Below are positions 53,040-58,481 of a stretch of DNA of 64,000 bases, piece by piece. Numbering within the stretch: the first letter of the stretch is position 1; each line of letters starts with the position of its first letter. The notes under the pieces are model-generated. The model had not been told where the DNA came from. It did not search any database and was given only the letters and a program-made list of their open reading frames with translations. The DNA lies in assembly GCF_003704095.1 (NCBI RefSeq), contig NW_020843834.1, forward strand, positions 62,001-126,000, in the 5' to 3' direction. Position numbers and translations under genes: made by a program. This DNA is from Pocillopora damicornis (taxonomy: Eukaryota).

Positions 53040-53465
53040 AACAATGGACAGAAGAGAGATGAAGGAACGGGGACAAACAAATTTCAATGCAAACTATTTA
53101 TGATGTGAAATAGTTAGACGTCAGGTTTCTCTACATTTTGCGATGGGAATTAAAAAATGATTTTACTTGCTTGATCTCTTAGCTTCATTTCTTTTTCGGA
53201 AATGGGAGTAATTTCATGTGAAAAGCAAGAATTAAGTTTACTCTGATTAATTCACTATGCGAACGAAGGCTTTGCTTGAAAGACAACCAAACTACAAACG
53301 TAAATCCCATTGATCAACTTTAATGGATGAAAACTTTAGTATGTTTTAATATCTTAAAACTGAATTTGACCGCCGGAATAAAATAAAAATACGTAGGCTA
53401 ATTTTCACTCAAAAAAAGATTTGTTCGATTTTTAGGCAACGAAACAAAGTAAACATGATTGGCGA

Positions 53466-56400
53466 CTACCAGTCGTCGATTCTCTTCTTTTTCTTATGCT
53501 TTCGTTTCGGCTGCCATATTGGTTTGCCAGGTTTAGGTGGCATATTAGCAGCAGCCTTTCTTTCCTTGTACTCTTGCCTGCATGAAAAGACAAGCGAAGG
53601 AAAAGTTAAAGTCATTGAAGTCATTTCTTCATTCATCCAGTTCAAGTATAGCACTGGTGTGCATCAATAATTACTTTTTAAAACTGCAAAACTAACGCAT
53701 CACTCGTTTGGCTACTGATTTTAAACAAGTTGATCTTAAACCTTCACGCCCTAACATCAGAAGCTATTTTCTTCACACCGTTCTTTGTACATTTCTTTTG
53801 TTACTGACAAGGAGAATTTCATTGACAATCAGGAGCTTCTGAAATTGGTGATCATTTCCTTTATTCTCATAACTTCTATATTTGATTCAAGAGTGATAAT
53901 ATGAGGAGAGATTAGAAACCAGTCACTATCAGGAGATTAAGGATTAAACAAGAAGGGCATTTCGCAGCACATAACTTACCATTTCCGTCCGATGTATTTC
54001 ACAATTCGTACACATAATCGGCACACGACAAAACCAGCAACCAGGAAGGCGACAGTGACAGCCAAACCAGCGAAGACAGCATAGACGCCATCTTGCCAAG
54101 ACAAGAAATCAAAGCGAGCTTGAATATGTATTACATGTTCTGTTGGAAAACAAAATTAATGTCATAAATAGTAAAAAAAGAAAAGTCATAAAAAAATTAG
54201 CAATTGTGTACTTTTTTCGCCGAGTCAAATGTAATAACTGAGAAAAAGTCGAACAACTGGCGAAATTAAGAAGAAATCTGAAGCATCCTTTAAAGTGCAC
54301 CGTGTAGCCCCTATATAGAGAAAATAATAGTTAAGTAATAATGATAATAATAATAATAATAATAATAATAGTAATAATAATAATAACAATTATAATACTA
54401 ATGATTATAATAATCTATTCCAGCCAAAAAGTGAGAGGTGAAATGGTCACTCTCTCCTCGGCTAGGCCAATTATGACTTGTCAAATTCAAATTGGTGAAC
54501 AATTGACTTACCACGGAGGAAACCAAAGTAAAACTCGACAGCAACGTCAGTTACATAGCAGACGACAGGAACAAACGGTTCAACAATCCACATAACTCCG
54601 TTAGTCATCATCTTGGTCAGCTCAGCTGATATATTTTGGATCATCTTGGCGAACGAATATGTTGCATTTATGGTAAAATCCATCAACCGTCGAAGTCCAG
54701 TCCAGATAGCCTCAGCTGACCATTGAATTCCATTCCAGATTACCTCAGCCAACAATTGAAGAGCATTCCAGATAACCTTAGCCAACAATTGAAGTCCTTT
54801 CCAGATAACTTCAGGCAACAATTGAAGTGCTTTCCCGATAACCTTAGCCAACCATTGAAGTCCAATCCAAATAACCCTAGCCAACCTTTGAAGTCCAATC
54901 CACATAACCTCCACCAACAATTGAAGTCCTTTCCAGATAACCTCAGGCAACAATTGAAGTTCATTCCAGATAACCTTAGCCAACCATTGAAGTCCAATCC
55001 AGATAACCTCCGCCAAAAATTGAAGTCCATTCCAGATAACCCCAGCCAACAATTGTAGTCCATTCCAGATACCCATAGCCAACCATTGAAGTCCAATCCA
55101 GGTAACATCCGCCAACAGTTGAAGTACATTCCAGATAACCCTAGCCAACAATTGAAGTCCAATCCAGATAACCTTAGCCAACAGTTGAAGTCCATTCCAG
55201 AAAATCCCAGCCAACAATTTAATTCCATTCCAGATAACCTCAGCGAACCATTGAAATCCACTCAAGATAACCTCAGCCAACCACTCGGCACACCTCCACA
55301 ACAATTTCCCAAGCCACCGCGCGCCGTTCCACGTCAAGCCTGAAAGCCATGCGACTTTTCCGCGAGTCCAATTTACCATTCCGATCCAGATGTCTTCAAG
55401 TCCATTCCATACTTTGCCAGTCACTGCCCTTGAGACCATGATGCATTTCTTCCATATGCAAGAGGTCAATTCCACCGTACCGTCCTGCACCTGGGTCATT
55501 ACTGTCACTGTAAAATTCCATATCTGGGATATTAATCCACGGTTTGTAATCTCGAAAGCCTCGTAATCAAAGCATGTTGTTTTTCCGAGATCCTGAATTA
55601 TTTTCTTGCAATTGAAGATCTGACAATATCAATTTAGAGAAGTTATTAGCCAAGTGACATCAGAAATAGTATTCCGGTTAGTTTGGTATTCTAAGACATA
55701 GAAGTAATAAAGATATTGGGAGGATGGGGGGGGGGGGGGGGNNNNNNNNNNNNNNNNNNNNNNNNNNNNNNNNNNNNNNNNNNNNNNNNNNNNNNNNNNN
55801 NNCCCCCCCCCCCCCCCCCGTGGGCATTTCTTCATATGGCTCCCATTTTGTATACTCTCATTAGCGACGCTGACCGATCCTCCCTCTGTCCCCAGAAAAA
55901 ATGTGATCCCTGCCAAAATCCTCCACCCCCCCTCCCTTGTCAAAAAGAAATGACTGGTCCTTGACGGTGCATTAAACGAACTGTCATATCTAATACCTTT
56001 GAAAGTTCAGGTTTGACGTAGCCATGGGCTTTGCTGTTAACAGCAATGGAAGCTTTTTCGTAAATCAACTTCAGTTTAACATTCATGGACGGAATCTCAA
56101 TCTTGACTGCAATCAGCTGCTGTACACACACAAAAAATAATTTTACATGAAAAGGCTTGGAAACGATTTAATTTTGCATGATATGTTCAATCATTTCTGA
56201 TCCATCTTAAATACATTAAAAAGAGGTCCGCGCGGCTGGAGCATATTCCAGTCTCTAAAGTTCAACAGTTCTTCGCAGATTTCTGATCCTCCTCAATTTC
56301 TCAGGTTTCCTTGACGACTCCAGTCTCGAGCCCAAGGTCATTTTGGCTCTTTGCAACGACAGCCATACCGCCGACAAATGATCAAAACGACCCTGGGGGC

Positions 56401-57180
56401 GAGATTGTAGCGACTCGCGCATCCCTGGTATGTAATTATGGAGAAAGACGCTGTAAGAGTAGGTGTCTTGCCCGCGATGCAAGGTTTCGAATTATAAATT
56501 TATTATTTCTTAATTGCAGTCAACAATTTGTTTTTCTCAGCAATCTAAATTTTGCCAAACCTCGTCGTCCCACTTTCCAGTCATCATCATCTTGTGTTGG
56601 TACAAATCATTTCGGCCCTGCATCTCACTAACTTTCAGAAGAGTTTCTACACAGAAAAAAAAAATGAATACTGATCATGGCAGTGAGAACAAAAAATTCA
56701 GTTTTGCGCTCTTGTAGGTTCTTTGAAATGGTCAACACCCCTTGATTTGGAGAGACACAAAAAATAATTTGCGCTGCGTAACCGTTTCTGGAGCGCATGC
56801 TACAAAAAAAAAAAAGAACGTAAAACCACGCGCGCAGCTACCATAGCAACAAGAAACATTTGTTTTGCGGATACAAAAGTACTTTTCATGAGAATTTCCT
56901 TGACGAAAAAGTCAAACCTCATAACCGGACAGATTTAGCAACGAAAACTGATCGATCCATTAACGAATATAGACCGCTTGACGAGACGATGTCGGGTTAA
57001 ATCCTTGTTTCTATTAATAAGTCCAGAAAGATCATTAGCCGTAAGGCGTCAACATAGAGAAAAATGTTTCTTTTGTTTTTCAGAGGGAGGAAATACCTTA
57101 CCGTCCAGTTTAGCACTGATTGTAGCATCTGAAAACGCAAATAAAAACGAAAGCACTATAAGCGCACTCAACCACTTCAT
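53466..57180 (-). CDS. Unrecognised predicted type I membrane protein (~555 aa): signal peptide, ~20 Trp-periodic 11-aa amphipathic repeats, TM helix, basic cytoplasmic tail
   Basis: Phase-consistent exons (minus strand): 57180-57102 (MKWLSALIVLSFLFAFSDATISAKLD), 56646-56561, 56119-55997, 55619-54512, 54139-53980 (VYAVFAGLAVTVAFLVAGFVVC) and 53577-53466 (WQEYKERK...KRKHKKKKRIDDW*); total 1668 nt. The exon 2 donor (GTTTGG) is the least certain boundary. Confidence 0.8.
54672..55331 (-). repeat. Coding 33-bp tandem repeat, about 20 units, consensus W(N/I)GLQ(L/W)LA(E/K)VI
   Basis: Plus-strand unit approximately 'ccagataaccttagccaacaattgaagtccatt'; no frameshifting indels across the array. Confidence 0.9.
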
Positions 57181-58481
57181 CTTCGATATGTCTCCGAATT
57201 TTTTGTCCTCTCTCACGAAAAGCTCAATCTTGCTCTTACCGCGAAAACGAGTGAAGTAAAGACTGACGTCACAATTATTCTTTACGACGCAGGTCGCACG
57301 TCACCTGCACGAGATGATCGCTTAACCGCTGTCATATATCCTTTCCTCCGACCCCTTAGTCGTAGTGACGGGCCTAAGTCGTGAGCAGGGCGGAGAGAGG
57401 TTAAGCAAGCCGCAAGCGTTCCCCGCTTCGCTCTGCACTCGTACAAGACGCACCCGACTTGGGGAGGGCAGAGGAGATAATGCATTCGCAACAATTACCC
57501 TAAAATTGAAACAAGTCGACGCATTATGTTTTCTTTAGCTAAAGATCTCCTTCCTGACACACTTCCAGTTCTGTATTAAATTAGCTTCACAGGTCTTCAC
57601 ACCCACTCAAGAGCCATAGGCGATGAATTAACGACCATCCCTCCCACAGCATTATTTAATTATACCATGAGAGCAGAATATCGATCACATTCCTCCTCGT
57701 CGTGCAACGTTGAGTTGCGTTCTAAAGGACGTGAGGTAAGATCACGCAGGCTGAGAGAGCCAAATACAAGCAAACTATTACATTTTTAAGGCTCCTTTCA
57801 TTAGATAGGGTAAGGTGTCGTGTATTTCTTATTGCGTTTTGTGTTGGTAGCTATGAAACGATCGGTATCAATGTCCCCATGTCGACGTATTTTCCATGCA
57901 TGGAGGCGCCGCTGCGGCAGACTAGCTTTTGGCGTTTCTCACCTCTTAATCTGTGTTTTATTGTAAGGATCAGAGAGTGTAAAAATTGATGCTAGACAAA
58001 TTGGAGGAGTTTTCAGCTGTAAATGCGTGTAATATGTCTTCTCGATATCTGTTTGGAAAATGAAAACGATACCTGTTTGCATGTCTCTAAATTATAATCC
58101 CAGCTCACTGTACGCTAACAACGAAATATTCACAATGGCGTGTTAAATTCCACAGGAATCGAAAGTGTAATTTCTATCCTCACACTCGTTATTGCAAACC
58201 TAGATTTGTTCAGTCGATGAATGTCAAGGTTTGAGTACCCACGTGCAAAACCGGAAAAAAAGTTGGAATTGAAACTCATATCTTAAAATTAGCTTCCAAA
58301 ACTAAGCTATGTTGCTTACAGTTTTCAATAAATTCGGGTGAAAGCTTTTTATATCTTCCTTATTATATCTTAGTCTATATCTATTATATCTTAGTGTCTT
58401 CAAAGGGATTTGAGATTTAATTAATTTATTTATAACATCTGTTTGTCAGAAATTCATGATAATTGTTGGACTGCTGTCACT

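What the first reader, a model, noticed from the sequence alone, without database searches (positions are those of the whole stretch)
53466..57180. Unrecognised membrane-anchored protein with ~20 Trp-periodic 11-mer amphipathic repeats (tape-measure/apolipoprotein-like)
Seen: the 345-aa track ORF is the core of a spliced ~555-aa gene. It has a signal peptide, a ~190-aa Cys-containing region, ~220 aa of W(N/I/K)GLQ(L/W)LA(E/K)VI, one clear TM helix with juxtamembrane Cys, and a KRKHKKKKR tail. Units 11-13 recur as 15-17 (a 132-bp higher-order duplication) and the frame is intact throughout, implying selection on a still-changing array. Established: 11-residue (3/11) amphipathic helices are the lipid-binding module of apolipoproteins, perilipins and synucleins, and 11-spaced Trp/Phe repeats characterise phage tape-measure proteins. 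Inference: a ~33-nm, very hydrophobic luminal or extracellular helix (or helical hairpins) acting as a lipid-surface coat, membrane spacer/ruler or membrane-active protein. I do not recognise a named animal family.
Basis: partly seen in the sequence, partly recalled or inferred. Interest (0 to 1): 0.8.

Follow-up and report, generated by a model that had tools for sequence, protein, structure and literature searches.

The report
Coral membrane protein with expanded Trp repeats
This is a real, spliced and expressed coral gene for a single-pass membrane protein whose 11-residue tryptophan repeats have recently multiplied to about 18 copies, but the extra copies appear to drift neutrally and the same gene is broken in sister coral lineages, so it is an interesting orphan family rather than a proven new molecular ruler.

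Summary
A six-exon minus-strand gene (1668 nt, 555 aa) is confirmed by GT..AG splice joints in polyA RNA from two samples. The N gap is spliced out with an intron. The product has a signal peptide, a Cys/N-glycan N-terminal part, 18 clean 33-bp units (consensus VIWNGLQLLAE), one TM helix with a CxxC, and a polybasic tail.

It belongs to a small unnamed family. Only 51 representatives were found among 1.84 billion proteins, and the named ones come only from Pocillopora, Stylophora and Oculina. Other members carry just 3-10 such units. No Pfam or PDB match was found.

The repeat does resemble phage tape-measure 11-mers: the [FW]-x10 pattern is present and there are weak reciprocal HMM hits. The gene context, however, is eukaryotic.

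The inference of selection on the array is not supported:
- pN/pS among units is 1.16.
- dN/dS against P. verrucosa is 1.08 in the array and 0.3-0.4 in the flanks.
- Copy number is 16, 18 or 19 in three lineages.
- Two other Pocillopora lineages share a +1 frameshift, with further independent lesions in each (a 3.8-kb insertion in exon 1 and a TGA; deletions of 17 and 10 bp).

The mechanism (a Trp-edged 11/3 amphipathic ectodomain helix) is inferred. The scan noted a similar protein elsewhere in this genome (s1-765162).

The parts
57102..57180 (-). Exon 1: ATG at 57180 and the signal peptide (MKWLSALIVLSFLFAFS/DA...); 79 nt, leaves phase 1
   Evidence: Sequence. RNA joint 56646->57102 in X1 and X2.
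56561..56646 (-). Exon 1b, 86 nt (..TLLKVSEMQGRNDLYQHKMMMTGKWDDE)
   Evidence: RNA joints 56646->57102 and 56119->56561. A homologous exon is present in NCBI models P0001 and P0004.
55997..56119 (-). Exon 2, 123 nt, 41 codons; predicted beta-strand part of the N-terminal region; tandem CAGCAG acceptor
   Evidence: RNA joints. Translation. Strands in the ortholog model (low confidence).
55742..55802 (.). Assembly gap (N), flanked by poly-G and poly-C runs; lies within the intron between exon 2 and exon 3
   Evidence: RNA joint 55619->55997 skips it in X1 and X2, and intron bins have zero depth. The gap was not filled.
54512..55619 (-). Exon 3, 1108 nt: Cys/N-glycan N-terminal part, the W-hendecad array, and the conserved helical C-part (DFTINATY...PFVPVVCYVTDVAVEFYFGFL)
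   Evidence: Translation. RNA contigs with 0 mismatches tile 54512-55505 and are spliced to exon 4.
54678..55271 (-). 18 tandem 33-bp units (11 aa each, consensus VIWNGLQLLAE), 198 aa; about 4 degenerate units lie upstream at 55403-55272
53980..54139 (-). Exon 4, 160 nt: TM helix (VFAGLAVTVAFLVAGFVVC) with juxtamembrane CRLC and a basic stop-transfer segment
   Evidence: KD19 = 2.60. RNA joints 54139->54512 and 53576->53979 (+1). pLDDT 88-95 for this helix in the ortholog model.
53466..53577 (-). Exon 5, 112 nt: cytosolic tail AAANMPPKPGKPIWQPKRKHKKKKRIDDW and the stop codon
   Evidence: Translation. The tail motif is conserved in Stylophora and Oculina members.

Best explanation
This is a genuine, spliced, polyA-expressed gene of a pocilloporid coral. 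It encodes a 555-aa type I membrane glycoprotein of a small, unnamed family that has so far been named only in robust-clade stony corals (Pocillopora, Stylophora, Oculina). Family members share this order: signal peptide, a Cys- and sequon-bearing N-terminal part, 3-10 Trp-periodic 11-residue units, a conserved helical segment, one TM helix, and a PPxPxKPIW-polybasic tail. In the Pocillopora ancestor the repeat segment of this one paralog grew by unequal crossing-over to 16-19 units. The units form a long 11/3 alpha-helix, or a helical hairpin. Its polar stripe is narrow (N, Q, E/K) and edged by Trp, and its apolar arc spans about 230 degrees. Such a helix cannot stay monomeric in water. Inferred: it is buried either at the extracytoplasmic membrane interface or in self-association. 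Also inferred: the basic, probably palmitoylated tail holds the protein to the inner leaflet. The extra units show no detectable purifying selection and the gene is broken in sister lineages, so the long array is most likely a tolerated, drifting expansion rather than a length-selected ruler.
For: Gene model and expression: five GT..AG joints, zero-mismatch RNA contigs across the whole array spliced to exon 4, and empty introns. Family and range: only pocilloporid hits; 51 hits among 1.84e9 representatives; named members only from P. damicornis, P. verrucosa, P. meandrina, S. pistillata and O. patagonica, all 'uncharacterized'; no paper mentions the locus names. Paralogs in the same genome carry only 3-4 units. 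Helix: AlphaFold2 helices 75-219 and 224-339 at pLDDT of about 72; hydrophobic moment 0.433 at exactly 98.18 degrees, mean hydrophobicity 0.43, Wimley-White -1.43 kcal/mol per unit; wheel. Topology: signal peptide, 4 sequons in the ectodomain, TM KD of 2.6, basic residues after the TM. Neutral array: pN/pS among units is 1.16, and the third codon position is not the most variable. Against P. verrucosa, dN/dS is 1.08 in the array (12N:3S) and 0.31 and 0.40 in the flanks. Across three lineages the array has 13N:4S, and the window carries the consensus-breaking states (W>G, W>R, G>V, L>P, L>S). Short W-regions of paralogs are constrained, with dN/dS of 0.37-0.41. Broken orthologs: P. verrucosa L001 has a +1 T, a TGG>TGA change and a 3.8-kb insertion inside exon 1. 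Tara scaffold L011 has the same +1 plus 17-bp and 10-bp deletions and 16 units. The same +1 is seen in an RNA contig of run X5.
Against: Substitution counts are small. 13N:4S in the array against 18N:13S in the flanks is not a significant difference, so weak selection cannot be excluded. In this lineage the frame is intact over 594 nt and the transcript is abundant in four samples with zero mismatches, which fits a working gene. All RNA evidence comes from Logan contigs, which break in repeats, so no single molecule spanning all 18 units was seen. No protein-level evidence exists. The homo-oligomer test gave no verdict. The N-terminal fold was not resolved.
Confidence: 0.6

Rival explanations
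1. One reading: the long array is a selected functional module. It would act as a roughly 30-nm membrane spacer or ruler, a lipid-surface coat or a membrane-active helix, with its length tuned by unit gain and loss.
For: The array is intact, indel-free and strongly expressed here. There is perfect 11/3 coherence over 198 aa. The motif resembles tape-measure proteins, whose length sets tail length. Copy number differs between lineages at 16, 18 and 19.
Against: Array dN/dS is about 1, and the window itself carries consensus-breaking changes. Orthologs are frame-broken in two lineages, with independent extra lesions in each. All other family members work with 3-10 units.
Confidence: 0.15
2. The whole gene is a transcribed relic in this species too. 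It is open by chance, because the repeat unit lacks stops, and it is on the same path to pseudogenisation as in its congeners.
For: There are three lesions in P. verrucosa and three in L011. The P. verrucosa-type allele is still transcribed, so transcription does not prove function. The window lineage carries helix-unfriendly substitutions. Paralogs could provide redundancy.
Against: The non-repeat flanks show dN/dS of 0.3-0.4. All six exons, the splice sites, the signal peptide and the tail are intact here. The window allele recurs with zero mismatches in four RNA samples.
Confidence: 0.2
3. The W-hendecad segment descends from a phage tape-measure gene captured by an ancestral coral, so the similarity is homology rather than convergence.
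For: There are reciprocal HMM hits between the coral family and true tape-measure proteins. The core W-[NDG]-G-[ILV]-[KQ] is near-identical, for example in P0029 and P0040.
Against: The hits are repeat-driven and weak (E of 1e-5 to 1e-11 over short periodic stretches). The same motif also occurs in unrelated bacterial toxins (P0055, colicin-DNase). The coral gene has introns, a signal peptide and a TM helix, and no other tape-measure domain (no PhageMin_Tail, no Pfam TMP repeat).
Confidence: 0.03

Closest known systems
Phage tail tape-measure protein 11-residue W/F repeats (Pfam PF05017 'TMP repeat'; Belcaid et al. 2011, PMC3271669)
   Same: The period is 11 residues with an invariant Trp marker and a W-N/G-G-hydrophobic-K/Q core. 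The repeat number varies through unit duplication and loss. A long alpha-helix is predicted. Weak reciprocal HMM hits exist.
   Different: This is a eukaryotic intron-containing gene with a signal peptide, N-glycan sequons, a TM anchor and a cytosolic tail. It has no phage neighbours, no PhageMin_Tail domain and no PF05017 match. The similarity is probably convergent.
Exchangeable apolipoproteins, perilipins and alpha-synuclein (11-mer, 3/11 amphipathic lipid-binding helices)
   Same: The 11/3 helical periodicity gives a straight hydrophobic stripe.
   Different: Those helices have wide, charged polar faces and are soluble when lipid-free. Here only 3 of 11 positions are polar, there are 21 Trp in 198 aa, mean hydrophobicity is 0.43, and the protein is membrane-anchored in the secretory pathway. 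There is no Pfam match to PF01442 or related families.
Unnamed stony-coral family (e.g. S. pistillata LOC111337428 and LOC111323509, P. damicornis pdam_00005747, O. patagonica LOC144656780)
   Same: The exon structure, N-terminal CKK..NTTC..WNFT motifs, W-units, PFVP..Y.TDV..FY segment, TM helix and AAANLPP..KPIW polybasic tail are shared.
   Different: Those members have 3-10 units, often with two Trp per unit (VWNGVTWLAER). This gene has 18 units with mostly one Trp per unit.
Trp-rich membrane-proximal external regions of viral fusion proteins (e.g. HIV gp41 MPER). This is recalled from my own knowledge and was not tested.
   Same: Both have a Trp-rich amphipathic ectodomain helix in a type I membrane protein that is expected to sit at the bilayer interface.
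   Different: An MPER is about 20 residues long, non-repetitive and directly abuts the TM helix. Here 198 repetitive residues lie about 70 residues from the TM helix.

Membership tests
Phage tape-measure protein | Run of at least 7 [FW] residues at exact 11-residue spacing (pattern 1 of PMC3271669) | tested here: met
   12 consecutive [FW]-x10, starting at exon-3 residue 130. Pattern taken.
Phage tape-measure protein | Significant match to curated tape-measure models (Pfam PF05017 or PF10145; PHROG tape-measure families) | tested here: inconclusive
   Pfam gave none at E<=10. PHROG phrog_4200 gave E=2.5e-5 and phrog_5493 gave E=2.4e-3, over the repeat only.
Phage tape-measure protein | Encoded in a phage or prophage tail module, without introns | tested here: not met
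   Six exons are spliced in polyA RNA. The gene sits in a 234-Mb animal genome with paralogs.
Apolipoprotein A1/A4/E, perilipin and synuclein 11-mers | 11/3 amphipathic periodicity | tested here: met
   The moment is 0.433 at 98.18 degrees and 0.07 or less at 95 and 100 degrees.
Apolipoprotein A1/A4/E, perilipin and synuclein 11-mers | Broad charged polar face, and a sequence match to the family models | tested here: not met
   The polar arc is only Q7, E11 and N4. The array's net charge is +3. There is no Pfam hit.
Unnamed robust-coral W-hendecad membrane protein family | Full-length collinear homology: N-terminal motifs, W-units, PFVP..Y.TDV..FY, TM helix and polybasic KPIW tail | tested here: met
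   Exon 3 hits P0001 at 8e-104 and P0002 at 3e-71. Alignment A1 supports collinearity. The tail and TM are identical or near-identical to P0001 and P0002.
Unnamed robust-coral W-hendecad membrane protein family | Restriction to stony corals | tested here: inconclusive
   All named hits are Pocillopora, Stylophora or Oculina. Several members lie on unnamed ENA contigs whose species could not be read.

The most novel reading that the evidence does not exclude
The family is a eukaryotic, membrane-anchored analogue of the phage tape measure. In this reading a Trp-marked hendecad helix has a heritably variable unit number (3-19 units, up to about 30 nm) that sets a distance or coats a membrane surface in a coral-specific compartment such as the calicoblastic or symbiosome interface. 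The Pocillopora expansion would then be a natural length variant. A still bolder version is that the repeat was captured from a phage.
Probability: 0.08. Interest if true: 0.75.

Novelty: new variant of a known kind. Interest (0 to 1): 0.38.

Why it matters
The finding defines a previously undescribed family of coral-restricted membrane proteins. The family is built around Trp-marked hendecad helices that closely mimic phage tape-measure repeats. It also offers a natural series for study: 3-10 units in paralogs, 16-19 units in Pocillopora, and both intact and broken alleles. That series could be used to test whether such helices bind membranes or self-assemble. For the scan it is a caution: an open frame across a stop-free repeat unit is not evidence of selection.

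Tried and rejected
- Pfam on every exon product found nothing.
- A PDB sequence-profile search found nothing.
- Foldseek of the exon-3 model against the PDB gave no hit at E<=0.001. The top rows fall on the low-confidence N-terminus and are meaningless.
- AlphaFold2 of the ortholog with a 24-sequence alignment was confident only for the TM helix, so no fold was obtained for the N-terminal part.
- The ESM Atlas gave scores of 0.79 or less, which is not informative.
- Complex prediction with three copies of the array returned no verdict, which is neither support nor evidence against.
- A literature search for the locus names of six family members found no papers.
- A high-depth RNA 'joint' at 54681->55186 looked at first like a short-array isoform. 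Its loose ends and the 9 bridging letters read as the paralog sequence (..LLWNCTEWLAW.. / ..WNGLQCLADFT..), so it is a paralog contig and not an isoform of this gene (compared).
- The plus-strand ORFs across the array (111 and 85 aa) were rejected because the splice-site orientation puts the transcript on the minus strand.
- Species names for the ENA contigs carrying further members could not be obtained.
- Every search used single exons by reference or database orthologs.
- The N gap was not filled.
Full report
**Observation**

The finding lies on the minus strand. Tandem Repeats Finder reports a 33-bp unit in 17.9 copies at 54692-55281, with 81% matches and no indels. Read in frame, exon 3 contains 18 clean 11-residue units at 55271-54678. 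The consensus is VIWNGLQLLAE, with Trp in 16 of 18 units, Gly in 14 and Gln in 16. About four degenerate units precede them.

I derived the exon boundaries from the sequence. My first donor choice for exon 1 was wrong and I had missed a small exon. Both were corrected by the NCBI paralog model P0004 and by RNA.

**Exon model, expression and the gap**

That is about the exonic share of the stretch. Laying four RNA runs on 53400-57300 gave five joints in X1 and X2, all CT..AC on the plus strand, which is GT..AG for a minus-strand gene:

| Joint | Note |
|---|---|
| 53576/53979 | cut +1 |
| 54139/54512 | |
| 55619/55997 | spans the N gap |
| 56119/56561 | |
| 56646/57102 | |

The exons are therefore:

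| Exon | Coordinates | Length (nt) |
|---|---|---|
| 1 | 57102-57180 | 79 |
| 1b | 56561-56646 | 86 |
| 2 | 55997-56119 | 123 |
| 3 | 54512-55619 | 1108 |
| 4 | 53980-54139 | 160 |
| 5 | 53466-53577 | 112 |

Together these total 1668 nt, or 555 codons plus a stop, with consistent phases.

- The assembly gap at 55742-55802 is inside the exon 2-exon 3 intron, and both neighbouring exons are in phase 0. The gap therefore does not touch the reading frame of the dominant transcript. I did not fill it.
- Zero-mismatch RNA contigs tile the array in X2 (54512-54866, spliced to exon 4; 54840-54998; 54972-55505). Intron bins have zero depth. The array is therefore kept in mature RNA.
- These are de Bruijn contigs, so no single molecule spanning all units was seen.
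- A deep joint at 54681->55186 turned out to be a contig of a paralog and not an isoform. Its loose ends and bridging letters spell the P0004-type sequence.

**Architecture**

Each exon was translated separately.

- Exon 1 is a classic signal peptide.
- Exons 1b, 2 and the first ~70 residues of exon 3 form a part with four Cys and the sequon NFT.
- From about residue 75 of exon 3, AlphaFold2 (single sequence) predicts two long helices, 75-219 and 224-339. They are broken at a Pro, with pLDDT of about 72.
- Exon 4 carries the only strong TM segment (KD19 = 2.60), followed by CRLC and basic residues.
- Exon 5 is a polybasic tail.
- The sequons (NFT, NWT, NAT, NIS), the signal peptide and the positive-inside distribution argue for a type I topology with the array outside or luminal. 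This topology is an inference.

The array has a hydrophobic moment of 0.433 at exactly 98.18 degrees (three turns per 11 residues) summed over all 198 residues. The moment is 0.07 or less at 95 and 100 degrees. Mean Eisenberg hydrophobicity is 0.43, and Wimley-White interfacial free energy is -1.43 kcal/mol per unit. On the 11/3 wheel the polar stripe is only Q7, E/K11 and N4. W3 and L/W8 flank this stripe, and the apolar arc is about 230 degrees.

**Relatives**

- Pfam finds nothing.
- The word search found only pocilloporid proteins.
- The exhaustive profile search with a repeat-poor family alignment found 51 representatives among 1.84 billion. All named ones are 'uncharacterized' proteins of Pocillopora damicornis, P. 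verrucosa, P. meandrina, Stylophora pistillata and Oculina patagonica.
- No paper mentions their locus names.
- Members share the N-terminal motifs, W-units (often VWNGVTWLAER, 3-10 copies), a PFVP..Y.TDV..FY segment, the TM helix, and the tail AAANLPP..KPIW followed by a polybasic stretch ending in W.
- The window's genome (234.35 Mb, 4393 contigs) has at least four further paralogous loci, each with only 3-4 units.

**Tape-measure likeness**

The remaining hits of the coral profile are prokaryotic proteins with W-hendecads.

- P0040 is a bona fide tape-measure protein (phrog_58, 6e-126).
- P0047 has the PhageMin_Tail domain.
- P0050 has a sub-threshold stretch matching the 11-residue Pfam 'TMP repeat' (E 0.0016).
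- P0055 is a colicin-DNase toxin with RGITWLARTVW units.

In the other direction, exon 3 hits the PHROG tape-measure family 4200 at E=2.5e-5. It also satisfies the published [FW]-x10 pattern 12 times in a row. It is confined to the periodic core, however, and occurs in unrelated contexts. I therefore read it as convergence on a hendecad Trp-Gly helix, not as membership.

**Selection**

- Among the 18 units pN/pS is 1.16, and codon position 2, not position 3, is the most variable.
- The P. verrucosa ortholog locus (L001, 96.5% identical) has 19 units. Its array dN/dS against the window is 1.08 (12N:3S), while the exon-3 flanks give 0.31 and 0.40.
- L001 carries three lesions: a +1 T at the position matching window 55204, a TGG>TGA change in the penultimate unit, and a 3.8-kb insertion inside exon 1 that splits the signal peptide. 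NCBI's 340-aa model skips the array and starts in exon 1b.
- A Tara Pacific metagenome scaffold (L011) has the same +1, plus 17-bp and 10-bp deletions in exon 3, and 16 units.
- An RNA contig of run X5 also shows the +1.
- Across the three lineages the array has 13 nonsynonymous and 4 synonymous variable sites. The window carries the consensus-breaking states (W>G, W>R, G>V, L>P, L>S).
- By contrast, the short W-regions of paralogs are constrained, with dN/dS of 0.37-0.41.
- The counts are small, and the difference between array and flanks is not statistically significant. Every line of evidence nonetheless points the same way: the family's W-helix is functional, and the Pocillopora expansion is drifting.

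**Mechanism**

Shown: the gene is real, spliced and expressed; the helix has 11/3 periodicity; the family membership holds; the copy number varies; and the congeners are broken.

Inferred: the helix has a 230-degree apolar arc edged by Trp, so it must be buried. I put interfacial embedding in the extracytoplasmic leaflet at about 45% and self-packing (hairpin or oligomer) at about 35%. The homotrimer test returned no verdict.

The gap was not filled.

Noticed in passing
window 53793-53923 (intron between exons 4 and 5): This stretch has very high RNA depth in all four runs (about 1,450-10,100), many contigs with loose ends, and 90-95% likeness. It looks like a dispersed, widely transcribed repeat element sitting in the intron.
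   Followed up: no
window 54323-54414 (intron between exons 3 and 4): An AAT/ATT microsatellite of about 30 copies. The same microsatellite is present at the orthologous place in P. verrucosa (L001 8307-8370).
   Followed up: no
window 55726-55741 and 55803-55819: The N gap is bracketed by a 16-nt poly-G run and a 17-nt poly-C run. This looks like a sequencing or scaffolding artefact at a homopolymer rather than a biological feature.
   Followed up: partly
L001 1665-5458 (P. verrucosa): A 3.8-kb insertion interrupts exon 1 of the ortholog. It carries arrays of a 10-bp unit (GGAATTCCTA / AGAAATTCCC) and is probably a transposable element.
   Followed up: partly
window 56114-56119 (exon 2 acceptor): This is a tandem CAGCAG (NAGNAG) acceptor. 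The RNA contigs here use 56119, whereas the NCBI P. verrucosa model uses the site 3 nt downstream, giving a difference of one Gln.
   Followed up: no
P0029, P0041, P0055 (metagenomic proteins): These non-coral proteins carry almost the same hendecad (VTWDGLKWLAG, AWNGTTWLGNQ, RGITWLARTVW). One of them is fused to a colicin-DNase/WHH nuclease toxin domain. The Trp-Gly 11-mer therefore appears to be a recurrent building block in bacteria and phages.
   Followed up: partly
G000:C1939:165951-172686 (L004-L006, L009): A cluster of several family copies sits on one contig, including fragments with internal stops. An N gap lies inside the exon of the best copy.
   Followed up: no
The same neighbour is present in P. 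verrucosa (L001 9959-10147), so the synteny is conserved.
   Followed up: no
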